Shown one piece after another: positions 45,930 through 64,000 of a stretch of DNA of 64,000 nt. The stretch is from Camelus ferus (Eukaryota), in contig NC_045696.1 in NCBI RefSeq assembly GCF_009834535.1, forward strand, positions 75,392,001 to 75,456,000, in the 5' to 3' direction. The notes below the pieces were generated by a model that was not told the origin of the DNA, ran no database searches, and saw only the letters and a list, made by a program, of their open reading frames with translations. The first letter of the stretch is position 1, and each line of letters starts with the position of its first letter. The position numbers were made by a program, and so were the translations under genes.

Positions 45930-47110
45930 AACATTCAATTCCTACATTCAACAATTTATTTATTCATTTAATGATTGGTGCTGCAAATATATCAGGAACA
46001 AAACAAAATCCTTGCTGTCATAGAGTTTACATTCTAGTAGGAGAGAGACAGACAATAAAAACTCAACATACAATATGTTGAGGGCTAATTTGCTATGCTA
46101 TAGAGAAAAAGAAAGCAGGGACTGAGGGTAGGAAGTGTGCAAAGGGGTGTAATTTGAAAGGAAGTTTTCAGTGAAGTCTTCTCTGATAAAGTGACATTTG
46201 GCAGAGACCTGAGGAAAGTGAGAACCTGAATCATGTGGCCGTGGAGGAGAAGAATTTTCCAGGCATTGGGCACAGAAGAGTCAAAAGCTCTGGGGTTTGA
46301 GAGTGCATGGCATGTTTGAGGAAGAGCCAGGATGTCAGTGTAGCCGCAGTGAAGTGCTAAAGACAGAGTGGTGGCAGGAGGGGGCGGGGAGGAACCCAGC
46401 TGCTGATCATGCATGGCCTGTGGGCCATTGTAAGGATCTGGCTTTTGTCCGTAGTCAGGTGGGAAGATGTTAGAGGCTTTTGAGCAGAAGATACTATGAT
46501 TTAACTTCAAATTTGAAATGACCACTGGTATTGGGTACAGAGAAGAATCAGTGTACGGGAGCAGAGGAGGAAGAAGCAAAGGCTCAATGGTGAAAATATT
46601 GCAGTAGTCTTAGAGCTAATGGTAACTTGCCTAGAGAGGTAGCTGTGGGAATAATAAGTAATTGATTTCTAGGTACAGTTTGAAGGTAGAGACAACGGGA
46701 TTTTCTGTGATATGTGAAGAGAAGAGAGGATTCAAAGAGGACTCCAAGACTTGTCTTCTGAGCAAGCAGAAGAATGGAGTTTCCATTTATATACATGAGG
46801 GGGAAATACGGGAGGAGGACATTTTGTGTAGAAATTGAGAAAATTGATTTCGAATATGTTATGTGTGAGATGCTTATAAGGCATATAAGTGGATATGTTA
46901 TATAGGTAATTGAATATATAAGTAAGGAAGTTAGGAGAAAAGTCCAGGGTAGGGATTAGAATTTGTGGGCTGTGTATAGGTAGTTTCTAAGGTCTTGAGA
47001 CTCATTTATAGAGTAAGTATATAGACAAAGAAGATATTTATAAGTGAGCCATGGAGCATCATTTAAAGATTTAGGAGATAAAAAGGAGCCAGCAAAGGAT
47101 ATTAAAAAAT
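45930..47110 (-). mobile_element. L2a LINE 3' region, about 1.2 kb
   Basis: 'cattcaacaattt', 'gagtttacattctagtagg', 'gtgacatttggcagagacctgagg', 'gggccattgtaaggatctggctttt', 'gattcaaagaggactccaag'. Confidence 0.9.
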
Positions 47111-47156: not shown

Positions 47157-47419
47157 ATCTCTTTTTCTAGGAAATCTGATTTAAGATGTAGGAGTCAGTC
47201 TCTGAGAAAGGATGATGCTGAGTTTTTCATGATGTACCAAGAAACCCAAGAAGGAAGGGTCTCTTATAGGAAAGGGGACCTCTGCTCTGTCTTGCTTGGA
47301 CCACAGGTTACTTTGGAATTTGGGGTGAAGACACAGTGTGTGATATGACATATGATAATAGGAAAAGGTGGCAATGTGTTTGGAAAAGGAGACATAGATA
47401 AACTTTGATGATGTTAATC

Positions 47420-47650
47420 TCCTTGTGACTATTAATATATTATATGCTTTTTGAAAAAATTTAGCAACTCTACTAATGAATGAAGAGAATGAAATACACC
47501 AATAATTCCACACTGAGATAACTACTGCTAACATTTTGGTGCAGTTTTTTCTCCATAGGACGTATCTATTAAAATTAGGATTACTTTGTATATATATTTT
47601 TGTAGTCTGCTTTTTTATTTGATATAATAGCAGAGATATTTTTGGAAGAT
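47420..47650 (-). mobile_element. L1ME 3' end fragment
   Basis: 'ataattccacactgagataactactgctaacattttggtg' resembles L1ME 'ataatcccaccacccagagataaccactgttaacattttgg'. Confidence 0.78.
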
Positions 47651-48500
47651 TCATTTTTCATATTTTGATGAAAGGAGAGAGATGATCAAAGGGAAGCTCA
47701 TGTTAGTTTGAGAAATGTCTTGTCCGAAATCTACCAATAAAGTAGAATGATGCCTGGGTGTATTTATGAGAGGCAGAGAACAAGGACGATTCCTGGACTT
47801 GGTGACTTGTGTCATGGTGACTGATACGGCTGTGCTACTCAAGGGGACTGAGAAAACAAGACTGACCAAAGCTTTGCTTATTCTTTATGTGAGGGTAGAT
47901 TCCAGACTTGCCTTCTGAATAATTGGAGAATTGTTGGTTTTTTATTAGTAGATGTAGCAGAAACTAAAAGGAAATAACATTTGGAAATGCTTTGGTTGAT
48001 ATCTACTTATGTAAACAGGTAATGAAATTTATTTGTGACACAAAGCAGGTTGTTTTGACTTAACTACTTTGGCTTTTTCCACAGCTTACAAAGAAAAAAA
48101 ATGAGCACTTTCCTCCTTTATTTTTCATGCTGTGGTGGGTCCAGTATTGACATATAGACCAACAAGATATAATTTAGAAATTTTTCCAATAAATCTGTGA
48201 AAATCGTGAAAAGCATTTTAGTTTATCAGTAAAGTGTTACAAGCATGACCACAACAAAATAATTTGTCCTATTGACAACTTTGATGTCATGAATTGCCCC
48301 TACAATAAATGCTTGATATGACTAGATTCAGAAGACATTGGTAAAATCAGAGTCAGTGAAAGTCCCTTTCAAATGAATGAAATTAATTAAAAAAATAGAA
48401 ACAATATTCAGTTGTAAACTTCTGACAACAGTAAATGAAATGCGTGTGTGTGTTTCTGCTTATGTATTATGAGCTTTCTCTTTCTACATATGAGCTCTTG

Positions 48501-48760: not shown

Positions 48761-49919
48761 AACTTTGTATGTTTGTGAATGGCAGCATATACACAGAAGC
48801 TCACAAATGTACAAACTCAACTGCATCATAGAATAGAAAAAGCCCCACTGAGCTTTGATTCCCGTATTTAGCTGAAAACATACTATAATTGTCTTTCATT
48901 TGTATTTCTAATTAATACTGCATTAATATAGAAGTTTTAGATACATTTGAAGAATATTACATTTGTTTATAAACATACAATTATTCTATGTATCTTTGCC
49001 ATTCATTATAACCAAATCAGTGCATCAGAACTAGTTTTTCAAAGTCTAAAGCAACATCTTTACGTCTTGGAGTTTACGAATCCCATCATGAAAATAACAC
49101 AACAGCACTGAGAAATTCACTCACTACATTTCTGCCACTTCACATTAAGGGTCACATGCAATGACAAACACTGAAACTTGCACCATAGATCAAGTTGGGG
49201 AAGGACTGGTTTCTGATCGTTGCATTTTTGCTTTAAGAATCTCAGTGTATGGTTTCCTGACATTTCCTTTTCTGAGTGAGCTATACCGATCCTATAATAA
49301 AGTACAAAGCAGTATAAGTTCCCTTGCAAATCCACTCATTATCCACTGGACTTTGGAACCCAACTGCCCCTCTGATCTTTCAAGGAGAATTGTGTTTTTA
49401 TGCTGTTCACTAAAAAAAGAAAAAAGAAGGGGGGGGAAAAAGGTAAAAGTCACGTCCATAACCTCTAACGAATCATCATTTCCATCTGCAGCCTCCTCAG
49501 TTGTTTAAAAGCAAGAGCAGGAACAGAAAGCCCCTTTTTCAGTCTAAAACTCTTGCTCTGCTTTAGCAAAACCATACAAACAGTGTGTATCAGCCTTTCA
49601 ATATGCAAAATGGATGAAGGTCCCTAATTTTCTTTTATAATAGATTAAATCCAGAGTACTTTTTTTTAATCAGGGAAATCCCTTGTAACCTTTCAATTTC
49701 CCCCTTTAAAAATTAGACTCTATGAAAGCACATTGACCATGGGAATAAAATATTTGCTTAACAGGTTTCAAGTCTTAAGGACAGCTTCCTCTTCTTTATT
49801 TTTCTTGGACCTTTATGCCTCCCACCCAACAAAGTCTTTGCTTAACCCTACCAACAGCCCAGCTGGCACTATAGATAAGAAGCAAACTGTTTTTTCTCCT
49901 TGACCTCTAATCATTCTAC

Positions 49920-50760
49920 TCCACGGGAAAAGCAGCGTGGAATGCACACTCAGCAGGCTACGAGCCTGGAGACAGTTTGTCCTCGAGGCACTGCTGCCAT
50001 AAAACATAATAGTATCCACTGTGTTTTGCTCTAAGCGGATCTGTCTCCCACTCCCCTCTCTCCCCTTTCTGCTTCTCACTCTGCACCTGGCTGCAATCCA
50101 CGACCCACACCGCACAGAGCAAACAAAACCACGAAACAGCAACAGACTCCTTTGTTTTACATGCAAATCCTACCTCCGGTAGTTGTCACATCTTCCTCAA
50201 AAGCCACGTTTAATTTTTAATGACAGCGATCCAGTGCAGTCCTCCAAATAGCCACCGGTAATCATCATTGCCTCTTGTGCCTANNNNNNNNNNNNNNNNN
50301 NNNNNNNNNNNNNNNNNNNNNNNNNNNNNNNNNNNNNNNNNNNNNNNNNNNNNNNNNNNNNNNNNNNNNNNNNNNNNNNNNNNNNNNNNNNNNNNNNNNN
50401 NNNNNNNNNNNNNNNNNNNNNNNNNNNNNNNTTGAAGCTGCTTCTTACTGTTTTTAAAGCNNNNNNNNNNNNNNNNNNNNNNNNNNNNNNNNNNNNNNNN
50501 NNNNNNNNNNNNNNNNNNNNNNNNNNNNNNNNNNNNNNNNNNNNNNNNNNNNNNNNNNNNNNNNNNNNNNNNNNNNNNNNNNNNNNNNNNNNNNNNNNNN
50601 NNNNNNNNNNNNNNNNNNNNNNNNACAAGACTGAGACAAACACTACCCTGCCAACGGATCAGATTTCCCAATTCTCTTTAACTACAGGAAAGAAAATTGC
50701 TTTTTGAAAATAGCTATTGTTACATGGAAAGTGAAGTTGGGAATAAACATTCTAGAATTC
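49920..50760. promoter_or_regulatory. Putative highly conserved non-coding element, core masked (N 50284-50431 and 50461-50624)
   Basis: Repeat-free context, 12 CpGs counted in 49920-50283, SOX/POU/HOX/MEIS-type motifs, masked core outside any repeat; conservation is inferred, not seen. Confidence 0.5.
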
Positions 50761-51334
50761 CCCAAACAATTCTCACTCCCAGCAAGGGACTCCTTCTCTT
50801 CCCAGTTACAAAAATAAGCATTCTCTTGAGTTAGGTAAGAGAATCAATCCCTAGGAAACATTCTCATCATTACTGAGGTAGGATTCAGAGCACACATTTA
50901 CATAAAATCTCAAATTAAGTATCAAATGGACTGAATGGATCAATGAGCACATTTATTTTTTCATACTGATTTACAAAGCTTTGTGTTCAGTTTGAAGCAA
51001 ACATACGTCCTGCACTTCTGTCCAAATGGAGAGAATGAATGACAGGTGGAAGGCATGGGGATGTGTGTACTACCTCGATCCACTTTGGACAGTCATGATC
51101 CTGGAAGGTGAAAGAGGAATTTCTTACCATTGGGCAGAGACGAGGGTATAACTTGGCTGGAAACACTACTCTGAAAAGTTCTAAGCACTCTTCCAAATAG
51201 GGAAGCAGAAGAAAGTTCTTGGTAGCTCTCAGTAACACAGAGGATGCGTTATGCTCGAACCACCCAATTTTAGTCCTTTTCTTCTGCTGTTCCGTCTCCC
51301 CTCCTGTTATCCCAGGAGCAATAGTTATATACTA

Positions 51335-51373
51335 GTTACTATGGAAACCAAGTGGTCTGCTCCAGGGGAGGGG
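51335..51373. promoter_or_regulatory. RFX X-box (GTTACTATGGAAAC, 51335-51348) plus G-rich SP/KLF-like box (GGGGAGGGG, 51365-51373)
   Basis: Near-consensus 14-bp X-box read directly; function untested. Confidence 0.4.
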
Positions 51374-52799
51374 CTTAGGAAAAGCTGCAGATAGAATATG
51401 CAGGGAAATGTACTGGTCTATAGAATTGAAAGTGAGGTATGATTAACAAGCAAGCAAACAAACGGAAACTACTACAAAACAAAATCTGAAAGGGAATGAT
51501 TATAAATCACCATTGTTTAATTACTGGTAATATTTATTATCTAGAAATATTATTATGATCATAGCATTCATCTTTTGTTATATGCAAGAATTCAATATCT
51601 GAATTGCTCAGATGTTTGATTTTAAAAAAGACACTTTTTTCCCTCTTTGTCTCTCTGGTTTTTTTTTTTTTTTTAAGTTCTGGTTGTCAGTTTGATTATG
51701 CCCTGATTGTATGTGAATTTTAATTGTTACTTGACTAGTCACAATTTCTTTTGAAGAATAAAATGTGATTTAGTGGAAAAATCTCCTTGTATCACAAACT
51801 GTAACTATTTCATTCTGGTTGAGTATCCTTATAGTGGTTTCCCTGGGGCAAAATCAAAATCAGAAAATATTGTAATTTAAATTCCAAAAAGTAATTCTGT
51901 TCCCACTATGTTGGTAGGACAAAAAAAAATCTTTTTCAAATTTTCAGTTCTTAAAATAGAAAAACAAATTTTTGTGTGTGTGTTTTGTCCAAAACCTTTC
52001 ACTAGCCTCAAGATCATGCAAGAGGAATTATTTCTTAGCAGAGTAATTAAATTTCACAGTTGTAAAGAGTCTGGGGAATATAAAATTATTGTCTTTAGTA
52101 CCTCATTTTCACAGTTTGTAATTGGAGTGACTGACAACACTGAAGTAAGAGCACAAAAATTTCAAAATGAAATTGTTGGGAGGTAATTCTTCAGGATTTG
52201 TAAAAAAATTCTATTTTTATTTTTTATAGGAAAGCATATCATTTAAAAATTTGTACTGGAAGAAGGATTATTTCAGGGGAAATGAATTTATGATAGTCTC
52301 TTTAAAAAATGATGGGTGAGTAAAATTATAAATTTTACATCCCAAATACTTTTTTCAAATGTACGGAAGTGTTTAAATGACAATCTGAAAACAATTAACA
52401 GCACTAAATATGATTTAGAAAGAGAGGGAGAGAGAGAATCAGAAAACCTCCCTAGGTGGATACTTCCCTCTGATCCTACAAGTGATTAATTCAGGGAACA
52501 GCTGTTAGTAATACAGGAGATAGGGTAAGATTTTTGATGAAGTAAGGGTGGGGCTGGGGAAGAGATGATTAATGATGCTTTAAGAAGGCTCTGTCCCTGG
52601 AGGGGTAGAGGCCAACTGACCTCTCTGATGATGAAGGAGGCTTCTGGAAAAGACAGTTCAGATGGGAGTGGGGGTGGGGTGGAAGATGGTTTGTTGAGGT
52701 AGTGGAGAAGGAGCAGGAAACCAGGAAAGGAAGCTGAAGGGAGGGCAAGAAGAGGAGAAGAGATCCATGTAGGAGGAAGGAAAGAATTTCATGGTGTTG

Positions 52800-52995
52800 G
52801 AAGAGGGCACAGGCTTTGGAATAAGGACACCTGATTTTGAAACTTGGCTGAGAGCCTATTTGAGCCTTTCCTGTGAAATGGGGTGTTCAGAATAGCTGTT
52901 GTAAGACTGCAGCAATAATAAGGCAAGGGATGTTGATAAGGGAGAGTAGAGGCTCTTGTGAACAGAAATACTAGAATAAATGCTAGCTTTTACTG
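52800..52995 (+). mobile_element. MIR SINE, internally deleted
   Basis: 'agagggcacaggctttgga', 'tgagcctttcctgtgaaatgggg', 'aataaatgctagc'. Confidence 0.65.
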
Positions 52996-54134
52996 AACAA
53001 GAAGAAAGATGGAGATGAGTGATTAGAGAGGAGGTAAGAGGAATGGGAAAGAGGGGAAAAGAAGGTAGGAAGAAAGGACGCATGGCTAGGAAAAAGAGGG
53101 GGCTTGGAGGAGATAAAAATTTCTCTTGTTGGATCACATATATCTTGTGTTTCTTGTTTTTGTTTTTGCTTTCTGGATCACGTTCCAATAACTGTCACCT
53201 TAGTTCTCTCCCTGTGATGAGGTTTCAGATAATAAAGTATCTTTGGTGCTCACACTTTTTTCAACAAGAGAGAACCTATGCTGAATTTGTTTAAAAGTGT
53301 ATTCTCCTGTATCAAAAAGAGCTGATCTGAGGATTGAATTTAGTAATTCGTAGCATTGCTTTTTTGGATGGTTCCCTGGAGAATGAAGTTTGGGGCAGCA
53401 GAAGGCAGGAACTGAAGTGATATTTCAGAACTATATTACCAAACATATTCAGCAAGTGTACTCTGTGCATCTGTAACTTGATAACATTTTTGACGGCATC
53501 TGCTCTCTGAATGCACGTAAAAAACTTGTTCTGAAAAGAATATGTGTATGTTAACAAATATTAGGTTGAGAATTGGAGCCTGGGCGAGAATGATGTGATC
53601 ACATATGCAGAGAATTTGCAGTTTACATGCACAGCCTGCAAGTTAAACAGTTTAATGAATGGAATGATGAATGCATAATTTTATTATGAGTCATCACTAT
53701 TAAAATGAAAATTTGATAGATACATAACCAGAAAGTGTAGTTATCTGTTACAGATACAAGTGCTAATTGTATTTTGGAGTATATAATTTGTGCTCTGAAT
53801 AAAACAGAGAGTAACTGCTTTTGCCGTGTTGTATTTTTCTAGGAACAACGGGAAAGTTAGTTTAGAAACTGCTTCCTTCCTGTTACATTCCTGTGAAAGC
53901 TGAAACTGATTCACTCTGAAGACTCAGTTTAGATCCATAAAAGAGGCATTCTCTAATATAAATGTCAAGTCTTAGCCCTAGAAAATAGTTAAAACAGTTG
54001 ATGAAAATCTGACATTTAAAGCACAGTGTCTGATTTCCAAGATGACTGAAGTGCCTTTCATTTGTCTACATCACTTTTCATAAAGATTTTCCTTCTCATT
54101 AGAAATTTTTTAAAGTTCACTAATGGAATAATAG

Positions 54135-54312: not shown

Positions 54313-55855
54313 ATAATACAGCATTGTTTTTATCTCATGAAACTTTTATTCCTAATTGTTCTCCTATAAATATCTAGAAATATAAGTACTAGAAGAATTT
54401 TTTAAAACCATAGAAAAGAAAAAGTGTAAACTGGAGCTTACCAGCATATTTTTTTTCTCTTCCCATCTGGCAAATATTCATGCCTGTTTTTACCTTTGAT
54501 TTTCTAGTTCTATGTTTTTAAGTTGGGGTTGGTAAACCTTTTTAAAAGATAAGCTATAGATTTTCACAGTTCTTCTAAGGACAGAATTGACATTAGATAT
54601 AATTCTATACTAATGACAGCAGCTGAACAGGATCTCTGATCTGTGGGCTACAAGCACAAGCCCATCTAGTGAGGCCATGATTTGGATCACTGTCTGGGAT
54701 TCTTTGATTGTATTTCTGTCTGTATTCATGAAAATTAGGAGAGAAAGTCCTGCAGGAAATCTCCCTTTCCATCAGCAGTTACTCCTATCAGCAGGTTTCA
54801 AAGAATTACCATTCTGTATGCCTGTGGTTGAAATGGGAAAAGGAGGCAGATGATAATAGAACATTCATGTTAATTGATTTACCTGAACTTTCGGAAGGGG
54901 AGAAACTTTCTCCCTAACATTCCCCCTCCCACCACCAAACACAGATAAAGATGCCCTCTCCCTCCCCTGGATGCCCATGAGAAAGCACTGGCACAGGCTA
55001 GTTTAACCAACTTTCTGAAGCCATCATTCTTTGGCTGAGCCATTGCATCTGGCAGACAGCTTACTGGGGCTGCATTTCCATCCTCCTGAAGCCTATCAGG
55101 GGATCAGACATAAATCAGTTTTAAAATAAAACATAAAATAGAGCAGTGAAAGTTGTTGGAGTTTTATTTCATTTGGGTTCTCTTACTTCCCGGGGCCTAG
55201 ATGCAATATTCCTGCTTTGGGGAAACATGCAGTATACCAATGTGACACTCCAGACATGGTGTATCTATAAGCAATCAAGGCGAAGATGATCAGTAGTTGC
55301 TATTGTTATTCTTATGACTTACGGCGCTGCAGTATTATGTACCCTACACAGCGTAGCATTAGATATGATACCTGCTGCTTTCGATATCAGTTAATTAAAA
55401 GACATCTGTCTTAAAAACAAAATGAAATAAAACAAAAAATCCCTTCTATGCAGTAGGCTCCAAAATTGGGTCCAAAGGACAAGGATTTATATGTATGTTG
55501 GTGTTTGCATTCATGTGTGTATTTTAATAACACACTAAATGTTGCTAGATCTTTAGGGTGGAAGAAGAATTATTTAACAAAATGCTTTTTAGCAAGTGTG
55601 TGAGCATTCATTGTAAAAGGTTCCACTGTGCAAAACTATAGGAAAATCTATTATGTTTGTTAATTGAAGAATTTCTAAGTGTTATTCAATGCTAGACATC
55701 TAAGAAAGTCTTAATAAATATTTCTACATTTCATAATTTACTTAGGGAAAGAATCAGCAAAATGGATATAAACAAATACATTCTGTATACAGAAATGTAT
55801 TTGTAAAGTTACTTTTATCAAGAGTATAGGTTAAAAAAAAAAGAGTATAGGTTAG

Positions 55856-57590
55856 CTTTAAAAAAATCGAAAGATATCCCATGCTCCTGGATTGGAAGAA
55901 TCAATATTGTTAAAATGGTCACACTGCCCACGGCAGTCTGACAGATTTAAAGCAATCCTTATCAAATTACCCAGGACATATTTCACAGAACTAGAACAAA
56001 TCATAATAAAATTTATATGGAACCACAGAAGACCTAGAATTGCCAAAGCATTACTGAAGAAAAAGAAAGAGGCTGGAGGAATAACTCTTCCAGACTTCAG
56101 ACAATACTATAGAGCTACAGTAATCAAGACAGCAAGGTATTGGTACAAAAACAGACATAGATCAATGGAACAGAATAGAAGCCCAGAAATGAACCCACAA
56201 ACTTTTGGTCAACTAATCTTCGAATCAGGAGGCAAGAATATACAATGGAATAAAGACAGTCTCTTCAGCAAATGGTGTTGGGAAAACTGGACAGCAGCAT
56301 GTAAAGCAATGAAGCTAGAACACTCCCTTACACCATCCACAAAAATAAACTCAAAATGGATCAAAGACTTTAAACATAAGACAAGATACAATAAACCTCC
56401 TAGAAGAAAACAGGCAAAACATTATCTCACATACATCTCAAAAATGTTTTCCTAGGGCAGTCTACCCAAGCAATAGAANNNNNNNNNNNNNNNNNNNNNN
56501 NNNNNNNNNNNNNNNNNNNNNNNNNNNNNNNNNNNNNNNNNNNNNNNNNNNNNNNNNNNNNNNNNNNNNNNNNNNNNNNNNNNNNNNNNNNNNNNNNNNN
56601 NNNNNNNNNAGGTTTGATCTCCAGAATATATAAGCAGCTCATACGACGTAATAAGAAAAAAACAAACAACCCAATCCAAAAATGGGCAGAAGNNNNNNNN
56701 NNNNNNNNNNNNNNNNNNNNNNNNNNNNNNNNNNNNNNNNNNNNNNNNNNNNNNNNNNNNNNNNNNNNNNNNNNNNNNNNNNNNNNNNNNNNNNNNNNNN
56801 NNNNNNNNNNNNNNNNNNNNNNNNNNNNNNNNNNNNNNNNNNNNNNNNATGACAAATGCTGGAAAGGCTGTGGAGAAAGGGGAACCCTCCTACACTGCTG
56901 GTGGGAATGCAATTTGGTGCAGCCACTGTGGAAAACAGTATGGAGATTCCTCAAAAGACTAGGAATAGACTTACCATATGACCCAGGAATCCCACTCCTG
57001 GGTATATATCCAGAAGGGAGCCTACTTCAAAAAGACACCTGCACCCCAATGTTCATAGAAGCACTACTTANNNNNNNNNNNNNNNNNNNNNNNNNNNNNN
57101 NNNNNNNNNNNNNNNNNNNNNNNNNNNNNNNNNNNNNNNNNNNNNNNNNNNNNNNNNNNNNNNNNNNNNNNNNNNNNNNNNNNNNNNNNNNNNNNNNNNN
57201 NNNNNNNNNNNNNNNNNNNNNCACTCTAAGTGAAGTAAGCCAGAAGAGAAAGAAAAATACCATATGAGATCGCTCATATGTGGAATCTAAAAATAAAAAA
57301 GAACATAAATACAAAACAGAAACAGACACTCATAGACATAGAATACAAACTTGTGGTTGCCAAGGGGGTGGGGGGTGGGAAGGGACAGACTGGGATTTCA
57401 AAAAGTAGAATAGATAAACAAGATTGTACTGTGTAGCACAGGGAAATATATACAGGATGTTGTGGTGGCTCATAGCAAAAAAAAATGTGACAATGAATAT
57501 ATGTATGTTCATGTATAACTGAAAAATTGTGCTCTACTCTAGAATTTGACACAACATTGTAAAATGACTATAACTCAATAAAAAAATGTT
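55856..57590 (+). mobile_element. Relatively young 5'-truncated L1 (ORF2 C-terminal part, frameshifted, plus 3'UTR and polyA), camelid-type 3' end
   Basis: Peptides such as [63 protein letters not shown] (ORF2 CCHC region), [12 protein letters not shown]; AATAAA then A tail; TSD a10-gag(t/c)ataggttag at 55833-55855 and 57591-57613. Confidence 0.97.
57364..57384 (+). other. G-quadruplex-competent polypurine tract of the L1 3'UTR
   Basis: 'gggggtggggggtgggaaggg': four G runs of 3 or more with 1-2 nt loops; known feature of L1 3'UTRs. Confidence 0.75.
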
Positions 57591-57691
57591 AAAAAAAAAA
57601 GAGCATAGGTTAGATATGACGGTGGCTTCACTGCATGCCCTGTTTTCCCACCTAAAAACAAAACACTGTATAATTCTTATAATAAAAGTGA

Positions 57692-59234
57692 ATGGAGCTG
57701 AAGGAATCACGCTCCCTGACTTCATACTGTACTACAAGGCTACAGTAGTCAAGGCAGTGTGATTCTGGCACAGGGACAGACACGTGGATTGATGGAGCAG
57801 GATGAAGGGTCCTGAAATGAGCCTGTGCACTTATGGTCAATTAATATAATATGACAAAGGAGGCAAGAATATATGGTGGAGAGGGGACAGTCTCTTCAAT
57901 AGGTGGTGCTGGGAAAACTGGACAGCTATATGTAAAAGAATGAAATTAGAACATTCTCTACCACCATATACAAAAGTAAACTCAAAATGGATTAAAGACC
58001 TATATGTAAGACTGGATACTCTGAAACTCCTAGAAGAAAACATAGGCAGAACGATCTTTGACATAAATTTCAGCAATTTTTTTTCGAACCACTNNNNNNN
58101 NNNNNNNNNNNNNNNNNNNNNNNNNNNNNNNNNNNNNNNNNNNNNNNNNNNNNNNNNNNNNNNNNNNNNNNNNNNNNNNNNNNNNNNNNNNNNNNNNNNN
58201 NNNNNNNNNNNNNNNNNNNNNNNNNNNNNNNNNNNNNNNGGGACTAATTTCCAAACAGCTCATATAGCTTAATATCAAAAAATAAACAATCTAATAANNN
58301 NNNNNNNNNNNNNNNNNNNNNNNNNNNNNNNNNNNNNNNNNNNNNNNNNNNNNNNNNNNNNNNNNNNNNNNNNNNNNNNNNNNNNNNNNNNNNNNNNNNN
58401 NNNNNNNNNNNNNNNNNNNNNNNNNNNNNNNNNNNNNNNNNNNNNNNNNNNNNNNNNNNNNNNNNNNNNNNNNNNNNNNNNNNNNNNNNNNNNNNNNNNN
58501 NNNNNNNNNNNNNNNNNNNNNNNNNNNNNNNNNNNNNNNNNNNNNNNNNNNNNNNNNNNNNNNNNGTTCCTTGAAAAACTAAAAATAGACTTACCATATG
58601 ATCCAGCAATCCCACGCCCAGGCATATATCTAGAGAAAAGTATAACTGGAAAAGACANNNNNNNNNNNNNNNNNNNNNNNNNNNNNNNNNNNNNNNNNNN
58701 NNNNNNNNNNNNNNNNNNNNNNNNNNNNNNNNNNNNNNNNNNNNNNNNNNNNNNNNNNNNNNNNNNNNNNNNNNNNNNNNNNNNNNNNNNNNNNNNNNNN
58801 NNNNNNNNNNNNNNNNNNNNNNNNNNNNNNNNNNNNNNNNNNNNNNNNNNNNNNNNNNNNNNNNNNNNNNNNNNNNNNNNNNNNNNNNNNNNNNNNNNNN
58901 NNNNNNNNNNNNCAGAAAAAGTACTACAAATTCTGTTTACAAAAACAGTTTCAAGTACATAGAAAACAAACTATGGTTACCAAAGAGGAAAGAGCAGGGA
59001 GGGATAAATTAGGGGTTGGGGATTAACACATACACATTACTATATATAAAATAGATAAATAAAAGGACCTACTGTACAGCACTGGGAACTATATGCAATT
59101 TTTTATAATAACATATAATGGAAAAGAATCTGAAAAGAAAATATATATGTATATGTATAACTGAATCACTTTGCTGTACACTTGAAACTAACATTGTAAA
59201 TCAGCTACACTTCAATAAAAAATTAAAAAAAGAG
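57692..59234 (+). mobile_element. Second, older 5'-truncated L1 (cetartiodactyl L1_Art-like 3'UTR)
   Basis: ORF2 remnant [38 protein letters not shown]; 3'UTR 'gggattaacacatacacattactatatataaaatagataa...gtataactgaatcactttgctgtacac'; 8-bp TSD aaaagtga at 57684-57691 and 59235-59242. Confidence 0.95.
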
Positions 59235-59449
59235 AAAAGTGATACATACTCATGATTGGAAAGTTAGAGTAAGTAGACAATATAAACAAAAGTTTCCTGC
59301 AGTGCTATAATCCACAGATAACGTATTAATATGTATTATTAATATTTAAAAAACTAGAATTACATTGCATATGTAGTTTTTTATGTTAATTTTCTCCTTA
59401 ACATTATAACATGTTTTCCATGTTATTTTAAAATCTTCAAATCTTTTTT

Positions 59450-59638
59450 ATTTTTTTATTACTTTTTTTCTTCCTTTTTTGTTTCTTCTTTTTTTTTTTT
59501 TAATGTTCTTTTTTAATGGGGGGAGATAATTTTTTAGGTTTATTTATTTATTTATTTTTCAAACACAGGTGCTGGGAATTGAACCCAGGACCTTGTGCAT
59601 GCTAGGCAGGCACTCTACCACTGAGCTATACCCTCCCC
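59450..59638 (-). mobile_element. Vic-1-type camelid tRNA-derived SINE
   Basis: Minus strand 'ggggagggtatagctcagtggtagagtgcctgcctagcatgcacaaggtcctgggttcaattcccagcacc' with intact Pol III A box (TAGCTCAGTGG) and B box (GGTTCAATTCC); perfect 16-bp TSD tcttcaaatctttttt at 59434-59449 and 59639-59654. Confidence 0.92.
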
Positions 59639-60839: not shown

Positions 60840-60874
<35 letters not shown>

Positions 60875-60881
60875 GTGTGTG
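60840..60881. repeat. (TG)n microsatellite, one interruption
   Basis: Read directly. Confidence 0.97.
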
Positions 60882-62279
60882 CATGTGTTGTATTAATTCC
60901 ATTCCTAATATGTCTTTTTAAATTATACTAATTTTAAAATTATGTTTTTAATTGGGATCACTGACTGGTAGTTAAAAACAGTATAATCTTTTGAAGTGAG
61001 ATTGAAATATCAGAAAATATGCAAGATAATGAAGGAAATTCAAAATAACCTGAAATAATTGAGACGTGTCAGAACCAACATTCTTAAAGCTTGCTGCAAA
61101 GCTCTTGATAGCGACAGAGTTGATAGCGTGGCCCAACTATGTCTAGTAAGTATGTAATGAGAAGCAGCAGTCAATCAAAAAAAGTGTAGAATGTCCCCAA
61201 ATGTTTATTTAAATTAATAGTTTATTATTATTAAGATGGAATATTAACATTATAAAATGGAAAATATTGGATAAGTATTTCATAAAACCATCACTTCTAC
61301 AGGGAAATTTAAAAACTAATCATAGCTTTTGAAGAAAAAATTCCCCAGAATTTTAGCAACTGAGAAGAAAATGTCTTGGGTAGATTTACTATAATGCATT
61401 GCATTATAAAAATCAAGCAAGCCATTCAAAACAGCTTGACATTATCTTTAAGTTCAAAATGTTATCTTTTTCATTTCCTTTGGAGGATGAAGTTCATGGA
61501 ATAGAGGATAATTTGGTGAAATCTTAACTATGAACGTGGCCAGATGGTGACTTTGTGAAAATTAGAAAAAAAAAACTACCTCTTCATCAAAACATTTATG
61601 AACCACCTGCTAGAAAATTGTCCCTATAAGTAGGAAAAAACCCCTATTATATCTAGGAAATAAATTACAGCCCCAGAATTACAGAGTAGAAAACTTGCAT
61701 GAGGCCCCATGGTGGCCTTGTGTGTCCGAACAAAGAAGAGGTAGCACAGGCAAAAATGATGCTTCCAAGTCTGTGTTTTAAAAAGGCTGAAATTAATCCT
61801 GTTATTTTCCTTATATTTTCATGATACTTGGATGTTAATAATTTTGATATTTGACTTATTTGATAATTCATGATCACATATCCATATATATATATATATG
61901 TATATGGAGAGAGAGGAAGAGCCAACTAAATACATGATTTTCCAACTAAACTATTTTATTGGATATTAAAGAGGCTGGTCTGGTCCCTGTTAAGATGGAA
62001 AGTCAAATGCAAGATATATTTTGAGGCACAGAACAAAAATATGAGGCTTAAAAGGACAAGAGACATGGGGATTTAATGCAGAAAATCAAACAGGTAAAAA
62101 CAGGTGTTATAGGGGCAGAAGAAGGAAACGGTGAAAAAGAGACAATAATTTTTAAAAAGTACGAAGAAATTGTTTTCCCTGCACAGAAGAAAGATCTGAA
62201 ATCCACTGGTGTCAGGGAGGATTTACATTATTTTCTCATCATCGTCTTCAAATAGAAGTGCTCCAGTAGATCTTTGTTT

Positions 62280-63452: not shown

Positions 63453-63493
<41 letters not shown>

Positions 63494-64000
63494 TATGAAG
63501 TACTTGGCTACACAGAAAATCCTTACAGATTTTTAAAGGTTAGAATTTTTTGAGCCACTTCTTCTATTACATACTAACAGAGTTAGTGAGTTACCATTGG
63601 ATCAAGGGAGAGTCAAATGGAAATGCTTACTACTATGTAGAAAATACAGAGGAGGACTCTGGATGCTATAACCTGCTACTCAAAAATGTACAGCCTTAAA
63701 TGACTTTACTATTAAAGAGGAAAAATGAAAAACATAAAAGCAAATAGTATGCATCTGAAGAGATTAGAAAAGCAATTTTGAAAAGCAAGAAACAGAATAT
63801 TATCAAGATAAAAGCAGAAATTAGTAATATGGGAAGTAAGAAATGGAAGAAAAGACAAATTTGAAACCTTAAATAGTCTAATGGAATAGATTTACCTGTT
63901 ATGAGCTGATTAAGGAAAACACAGTGAATAAAAATATACAAGACATAAATGAGAAAAAAGATATAACTGCACATATAGAAGATTAAAATAATTGTATGGA
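62800..64000 (+). mobile_element. Ancient L1M ORF2 endonuclease region, heavily degraded, runs off the window
   Basis: 'aaaagactgagactatcaaattgggttaaaaaca', 'aaagcaagggttgcagtatcaat', 'aaatacataaagcaaaaact', 'atagaagaattgaacag', 'aagataaaagcagaaattag'. Confidence 0.82.
63453..63488. repeat. (AAT)12 microsatellite
   Basis: Read directly; perfect repeat inside the L1M. Confidence 0.97.

What the first reader, a model, noticed from the sequence alone, without database searches (positions are those of the whole stretch)
50284..50624. Length-preserving N masks point to a hidden highly conserved element outside any repeat
Seen: eight N runs of about 130-270 nt, six inside L1 copies. In the first L1 the reading frame passes through three masks with 44, 53 and 51 codons between flanking motifs (QAIE..GLISRIY, KWAE..DKCW, EALL..TLSEVSQ). 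These equal the spacings I count in human L1 ORF2p from memory, so the Ns replace real sequence one for one. Inference: the mask removed segments closely matching some reference, plausibly human. The two masks at 50284-50431 and 50461-50624 are not in a repeat, so they probably cover an ultraconserved-type element, a conserved exon or a small RNA hairpin pair.
Basis: partly seen in the sequence, partly recalled or inferred. Interest (0 to 1): 0.7.

Follow-up and report, generated by a model that had tools for sequence, protein, structure and literature searches.

The report
Masked human-like element beside CpG-rich block

Summary
The window has eight N runs of 131-268 nt. Six lie in two head-to-tail L1 3' fragments. 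In L1 copy 1 a 287-codon frame runs through three masks of 44, 53 and 51 codons. Using coordinates only, each mask matches the spacing of solved L1 ORF2p exactly. The one 2-residue difference lies in unmasked sequence. So the Ns replace real letters one for one and are not assembly gaps.

The pair at 50284-50431 and 50461-50624 has flanks that are unique in the window. The flanks carry no transposon or L1 protein signal, no Rfam match and no coding signal.

New here: the 384 nt to the left (49900-50283) hold 12 CpGs, observed/expected 0.58. That is the highest value in the 64 kb (median 0.13). The special region is therefore about 750 nt long.

"Ultraconserved" is overstated, for two reasons. 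Diverged L1 ORF2 pieces also trip the mask. Neither mask reaches 200 nt, and the 29-nt island between them is unmasked.

My estimates: conserved regulatory element 45%, exon with conserved neighbouring sequence 30%, copy of a conserved RNA or gene 10%, repeat 10%. Other first readers in this scan noted the same masking pattern elsewhere in this camel genome. Interest is low.

The parts
49900..50283 (.). Left shoulder: unmasked single-copy block that retains CpGs. GC is 0.49, it holds 12 CpGs, observed/expected is 0.58, and it is C-rich on the + strand.
   Evidence: It has the highest CpG count and observed/expected ratio of any 400-nt window (median 0.126, 99th percentile 0.405). Poisson P(>=12) is 1.2e-6, or 2e-4 after correcting for 163 windows. 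It falls short of classic CpG-island criteria. No RNA structure signal and no Pfam match.
   Evidence: The one-for-one behaviour is inferred from the six L1 masks.
50432..50460 (.). 29-nt unmasked island between the two masks. It is AT-rich and on the - strand contains ACA|GTAAGA, a donor-like site.
   Evidence: It is too short to be an assembly contig. Three of six frames are open. GTAAGA occurs 39 times in the window counting both strands.
50625..50643 (-). Right edge. On the - strand it reads gtgtttgtctcag|TCTTGT, an acceptor-like site 6 nt outside mask 2. With the donor-like site in the island it would define a hypothetical 182-nt - strand exon at 50449-50630. This is unproven.
   Evidence: Sequence. 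Acceptor-like motifs occur about 1.7 times per kb per strand. This was noticed after the fact.
55819..57603 (+). L1 copy 1: a 5'-truncated ORF2 C-terminal part plus 3' UTR and A tail. It carries masks at 56479-56609, 56693-56848 and 57071-57221.
57604..59240 (+). L1 copy 2: an older, frameshifted ORF2 C-terminal part plus 3' UTR and A tail. It carries masks at 58094-58239, 58298-58565 and 58658-58912.
   Evidence: The diagonal against copy 1 shifts only from 1632 to 1620 across the masks.

Best explanation
The eight N runs are deliberate, length-preserving masks that the scan's pipeline laid over stretches resembling human sequence. They are not assembly gaps. This part is shown. Six of them cover conserved coding parts of two L1 ORF2 fragments. 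The remaining pair hides about 312 nt of a 341-nt single-copy stretch that resembles some human sequence at least as closely as the best-kept L1 ORF2 pieces do. Together with the adjoining 384-nt CpG-retaining shoulder it forms a region of about 750 nt in an otherwise AT-rich, CpG-poor window with no detectable exons. The following is inferred. The region is most likely a conserved cis-regulatory module: a block of transcription-factor sites kept by selection (the masked part), next to a weak CpG-island-like stretch that stays unmethylated in the germ line and so keeps its CpGs. Poised developmental enhancers with nearby orphan CpG islands have this layout. The region would act by binding factors and contacting a distant promoter.
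For: One-for-one masks. Single copy in the window. No transposon or L1 protein signal in the flanks. No coding signal in the flanks. No Rfam family in 49000-52000 or at gathering score in the window. The CpG shoulder is unique in the window. The rest of the window has no other non-L1 mask, so conserved exons are otherwise absent. No significant transcription-type strand asymmetry. Layout of conserved poised enhancers beside weak or orphan CpG islands: bioRxiv 10.1101/2021.01.18.427085, read.
Against: The masked letters were not read, so their conservation, coding capacity and repeat status are all inferred. The shoulder does not meet CpG-island criteria. The octamer ATGCAAAT at 50161 is at chance level, with 9 in the window against 5.7 expected. 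Candidate - strand splice signals bracket mask 2. First readers elsewhere in this genome report N runs falling on exons (unchecked). No mammalian repeat library was available.
Confidence: 0.45

Rival explanations
1. The masks hide a conserved exon (coding, UTR or lncRNA) together with conserved adjoining intron or promoter sequence. One concrete version is a 182-nt - strand exon at 50449-50630 whose downstream intron, mask 1, is also conserved, as happens at tightly regulated alternative exons. Another version is a + strand first exon behind the CpG-rich shoulder.
For: An acceptor-like tgtttgtctcag|TCTTGT and a donor-like ACA|GTAAGA sit 6 and 12 nt outside mask 2 on the same strand and in the right order. 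The joint chance is roughly 5e-4 before allowing for the post hoc search. The CpG shoulder could be a promoter. Both L1s are on the + strand, which fits the known antisense bias of L1 in - strand genes. That last point is from my own knowledge and is weak.
Against: No coding or Pfam signal continues into the flanks. A conserved span of 341 nt is long for an internal exon, and the 29-nt island would be an odd hole in one. Strand asymmetry outside L1 does not show - strand transcription: TA skew 0.006 and GC skew 0.035, with confidence intervals that exclude about -0.04. No other exon-like mask occurs in the 64 kb.
Confidence: 0.3
2. The masks hide a copy of a conserved RNA or gene that is not orthologous to noncoding DNA. 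Examples are a small nuclear or cytoplasmic RNA gene or pseudogene, a miRNA or snoRNA pair, a processed retrocopy of a conserved mRNA, or a fragment of ribosomal or mitochondrial origin.
For: Such sequences are nearly identical to human and would be masked. The mask sizes of 148 and 164 nt are in the small-RNA range. An octamer lies 116 nt upstream of mask 1 on the + strand.
Against: No Rfam match reaches into the flanks or the island. No T-run terminator, A tail, target-site duplication or polyadenylation signal lies at the edges. The octamer is at chance level. Matches between mask lengths and known RNA lengths are cheap, since one L1 mask also happens to match a known RNA length. That point is from my own knowledge and was not used as evidence.
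Confidence: 0.1
3. The masks hide part of an interspersed repeat shared with human, either another L1 piece or another old transposon, that happens to match some human copy well.
For: Six of the eight masks are in L1, so repeats can trip the mask. No mammalian repeat library was available to exclude old families.
Against: The flanks have no second copy in the window, no transposon domain and no L1 ORF2 similarity. The L1 masks, by contrast, are flanked by plainly L1-coding sequence. Old repeats lose their CpGs, yet the adjoining block has the highest CpG retention in the window. Nothing else in about 60 kb of non-L1 sequence is masked.
Confidence: 0.1
4. The two runs are true assembly gaps of estimated length, and nothing conserved is hidden.
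For: The scan's program labels them as possible gaps.
Against: The six other runs of the same size class are exact to the codon. A 29-nt contig between two gaps is implausible. The lengths are not round numbers.
Confidence: 0.03

Closest known systems
Conserved noncoding elements and poised developmental enhancers with nearby orphan or weak CpG islands (bioRxiv 10.1101/2021.01.18.427085)
   Same: A single-copy, noncoding-looking stretch similar to human. It sits directly beside the most CpG-retaining block of an AT-rich window with no detectable exons.
   Different: Conservation is only inferred from the mask. The CpG block misses the island criteria. No chromatin, methylation or activity data exist here.
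Ultraconserved elements: 200 nt or more at 100% identity between human, mouse and rat (UCbase, PMC4064129). UCNEs: 200 nt or more at over 95% identity between human and chicken (PMC5836973).
   Same: Unique sequence that is unusually similar to human and lies in a gene-poor setting.
   Different: The masks are 148 and 164 nt long and are split by 29 unmasked nt, so no human-like run reaches 200 nt. The mask threshold is low enough to catch diverged L1 ORF2.
LINE-1 ORF2 3' fragments
   Same: Six of the eight masks sit in two such fragments. The match to solved L1 ORF2p has E = 1e-48 over residues 982-1263, and both copies have A tails.
   Different: The target pair shows no L1 similarity in its flanks.
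Highly conserved alternative exons with conserved flanking intron
   Same: Acceptor-like and donor-like sites bracket mask 2 on the - strand, and a second conserved block follows directly.
   Different: There is no transcript evidence and no strand-asymmetry support. The signals were found after the fact.

Membership tests
Deliberate length-preserving mask (as opposed to an assembly gap) | Reading frame and residue spacing are kept exactly across the N run | tested here: met
   L1 copy 1 has a 287-codon open frame through three runs. The spacing equals that of solved L1 ORF2p for each run.
Deliberate length-preserving mask (as opposed to an assembly gap) | The same holds for the target pair 50284-50431 and 50461-50624 | tested here: inconclusive
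   There is no frame or homologue to measure against. It is inferred from the other six runs, the 29-nt island and the non-round lengths.
Ultraconserved element (strict) | An uninterrupted run of 200 nt or more that is identical to human | tested here: not met
   The longest mask here is 164 nt and the 29-nt island is unmasked. This assumes the mask would have covered any stretch identical to human.
Ultraconserved element (strict) | Identity to human, mouse and rat (or chicken) | not testable with these tools
Conserved noncoding regulatory element | Single copy, with no coding or transposon signal | tested here: met
   for the flanks and island only.
Conserved noncoding regulatory element | Conservation above the neutral level, at the orthologous position | not testable with these tools
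   Only implied by the mask.
Classic CpG island (200 nt or more, GC at least 0.5, observed/expected at least 0.6) | All three criteria met in one window | tested here: not met
   No window of 200, 250 or 300 nt in the 64 kb qualifies. The shoulder comes closest, with observed/expected 0.58-0.63 at GC 0.49-0.50.
Coding exon | Open frame with protein similarity, bounded by splice sites | tested here: inconclusive
   No Pfam or ORF signal in the flanks. Candidate - strand acceptor and donor sites lie around mask 2. The interior is unreadable.
Small RNA gene (an Rfam family) | A covariance-model match | tested here: inconclusive
   Nothing in the flanks at E up to 10 beyond chance-level hits. The interior is masked.
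Interspersed repeat | Other copies, or similarity to transposon proteins | tested here: not met
   within the window only. Old noncoding repeat families could not be screened.
LINE-1 (the six other masks) | ORF2p similarity and a 3' A tail | tested here: met

The most novel reading that the evidence does not exclude
The hidden block and its CpG shoulder form a functional unit of an uncommon type. One possibility is a very highly conserved regulated exon on the - strand (50449-50630) with a conserved downstream intronic control element. The other is a poised-enhancer module with its own weak orphan CpG island. In either case the unit would be shared between camel and human.
Probability: 0.15. 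Interest if true: 0.3.

Novelty: already known. Interest (0 to 1): 0.12.

Why it matters
The main value is for the scan itself. Frames and distances across them can therefore be trusted, and a mask outside a repeat marks conserved sequence. The hidden element resembles human sequence by construction, so its human counterpart is already in annotated, much-studied DNA. Little new biology is at stake. The one added observation is that the conserved block adjoins the only CpG-retaining stretch in 64 kb. That points to a regulatory or promoter-proximal role and widens the region worth looking at to 49900-50660.

Tried and rejected
- Rfam at gathering score on the whole window found only a tRNA-like SINE head. 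At E up to 10 on 49000-52000 it gave only chance-level hits.
- RNA folding of the shoulder on both strands gave z-scores of 0.28 and 0.22, so there is no structure signal.
- The octamer ATGCAAAT near the mask is at chance level: 9 found, 5.7 expected. I did not count the homeodomain-type TAAT and TGACAG motifs as evidence.
- The bacterial promoter and terminator scan is irrelevant here and matched the shuffles.
- Pfam scans of 20 flank and window ORFs found nothing. Pfam also misses the C-terminal part of L1 ORF2.
- I searched protein representatives hoping to fetch a full-length non-human L1 ORF2 for annotating the flanks. The search returned only fragments of 103-411 aa. Run against the window with tblastn, these hit only the two L1 copies.
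- Retrocopy idea: no A or T tail, polyadenylation signal or duplication lies at the edges.
- Transcription-type strand asymmetry is not significant.
- I considered the matches between mask lengths and known small-RNA lengths and dropped them as chance.
- Notes from the scan near this place: none.

Full report
**What is there.** The window contains exactly eight N runs: 50284-50431 (148 nt), 50461-50624 (164), 56479-56609 (131), 56693-56848 (156), 57071-57221 (151), 58094-58239 (146), 58298-58565 (268) and 58658-58912 (255). The two runs of the finding are separated by 29 readable bases.

**Are the runs gaps or masks?** The scan's program asked for this test first. The six runs at 56.4-58.9 kb lie in two 5'-truncated L1 fragments placed head to tail on the + strand. 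Copy 1 spans about 55819-57603 and copy 2 about 57604-59240. Each ends in an AATAAA-type signal and an A tail.

- In copy 1 the frame 56404-57264 is open for 287 codons. The other two frames have 8 and 6 stops.
- I compared this frame with solved L1 ORF2p chains, using only the reported coordinates and never displaying an alignment. The whole frame matches as one stretch, residues 4-283 against chain 982-1263.
- Three sub-queries, each holding one mask, show where the 2-residue difference lies. Mask 1: 92 against 92 residues. The residue after mask 2 sits at chain 1129, which equals 982+147, so masks 1 and 2 add no length. ORF residues 221-283 match chain 1201-1263, so mask 3 is exact. The 2-residue difference falls in the unmasked residues 151-221.
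- Copy 2 against copy 1 keeps its alignment diagonal within 12 nt across about 490 nt that include masks in both copies.

The Ns therefore replace real letters one for one. For the target pair there is no frame to test. Continuity is inferred from the other six runs, from the odd lengths, and from the 29-nt island, which no assembler would place as a contig between two gaps.

**What the mask means.** The operators state that N stretches are gaps or are masked on purpose. They also forbid filling them from other copies of this genome or from human sequence. It also sets the scale. L1 pieces diverged since the camel-human split trip the mask. Neighbouring L1 coding sequence that still scores about 1.5 bits per residue against human ORF2p does not. 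So the threshold is 'clearly more similar than neutral DNA', not 'ultraconserved'. A strict ultraconserved element of 200 nt or more cannot fit.

**Is the target in a repeat?**
- The flanks 49000-50283 and 50625-52000 and the island have no second copy in the window.
- A self-comparison of all 64 kb finds only the two L1 fragments.
- Twenty ORF pieces from the flanks and elsewhere give no Pfam family.
- 150 L1 ORF2 fragments from a library-wide search hit only the two L1 copies.
- Old noncoding repeat families could not be screened, because no such library is among the tools.

**What the flanks say.**
- They have no long or recognisable reading frame.
- There is no Rfam match beyond chance-level hits.
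- RNA structure is no stronger than in shuffled sequence.
- The octamer at 50161 is at chance level.

One feature stands out and was not in the finding. The 384 nt directly left of mask 1 (49900-50283) hold 12 CpGs at GC 0.49, observed/expected 0.58. That is the top value of all 400-nt windows, against a median of 0.126 and a 99th percentile of 0.405. The block follows 454 nt with no CpG at all. Poisson P is 1.2e-6, or 2e-4 after correcting for the number of windows. It just misses the classic CpG-island criteria, which nothing in the window meets. CpGs survive where DNA stays unmethylated in the germ line or is under selection. The special region is therefore about 750 nt (49900-50660), and only part of it is similar enough to human to be masked.

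**Best reading.** The most likely explanation is a conserved cis-regulatory module: a selected block of factor-binding sites beside a weak CpG-island-like stretch. Conserved poised enhancers with nearby orphan or weak CpG islands have this layout (bioRxiv 10.1101/2021.01.18.427085). The window offers no other non-L1 mask, so it has no other conserved exon. Its strand asymmetry outside L1 is not distinguishable from zero: TA skew 0.006 (CI -0.021 to 0.031) and GC skew 0.035 (CI -0.005 to 0.075). That fits intergenic DNA or DNA silent in the germ line. I put this reading at 45%.

**Rivals.**
- *An exon (30%).* On the - strand an acceptor-like tgtttgtctcag|TCTTGT lies 6 nt before mask 2 and a donor-like ACA|GTAAGA lies 12 nt after it. 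Together they would define a 182-nt exon at 50449-50630, with mask 1 as conserved downstream intron. The joint chance is small (GTAAGA occurs 39 times in the window; acceptor-like sites occur 1.7 per kb per strand). However, I found the pair after looking, and the strand asymmetry does not favour - strand transcription. Other first readers report N runs on exons elsewhere in this camel genome (unchecked), which raises the prior.
- *A copy of a conserved RNA or mRNA (10%).* There is no terminator, tail or Rfam support at the edges.
- *A repeat (10%).* This is disfavoured by the unique, CpG-rich flank.
- *True gaps (3%).*

**Limits.** I did not do it, and I did not scan public collections with the flanks, because that could have returned such copies. 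The nature of the hidden sequence therefore remains an inference.

**Verdict.** The underlying element is an ordinary kind of conserved sequence whose human counterpart lies in well-annotated DNA.

Noticed in passing
window 55819-59240 (+): Two 5'-truncated L1 3' fragments sit head to tail in the same orientation. Copy 1 keeps a 287-codon open frame. Copy 2 is frameshifted, looks older, and is masked over a larger share of its length. Their 3' UTR ends match each other (57406-57597 and 59047-59231).
   Followed up: partly
window 59440-59635 (-): A tRNA-Ala(AGC)-like head at 59564-59635 (Rfam 41.7 bits; also called by ARAGORN) is followed on the - strand by a long A-rich tract. It looks like a tRNA-derived SINE. 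It is not masked despite its tRNA likeness.
   Followed up: partly
window 49470-49923: A stretch of 454 nt without a single CpG lies directly before the CpG-dense shoulder, which makes the boundary at about 49900 sharp.
   Followed up: no
window 46001-47000 and 52001-53000: Kilobase blocks with strong G-over-C skew on the + strand (0.44 and 0.38). ORFs of 164 and 157 aa at 46085-46579 and 47181-47654 (-) have no Pfam match. They are probably old repeats in antisense orientation.
   Followed up: partly
window 60840-60888 and 63453-63495: A (TG)n microsatellite and an (AAT)n microsatellite.
   Followed up: no
window 1-64000: Apart from the two L1 fragments, nothing in the 64 kb is repeated within the window at E below 1e-5. 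No young SINE family shows up by self-comparison.
   Followed up: yes
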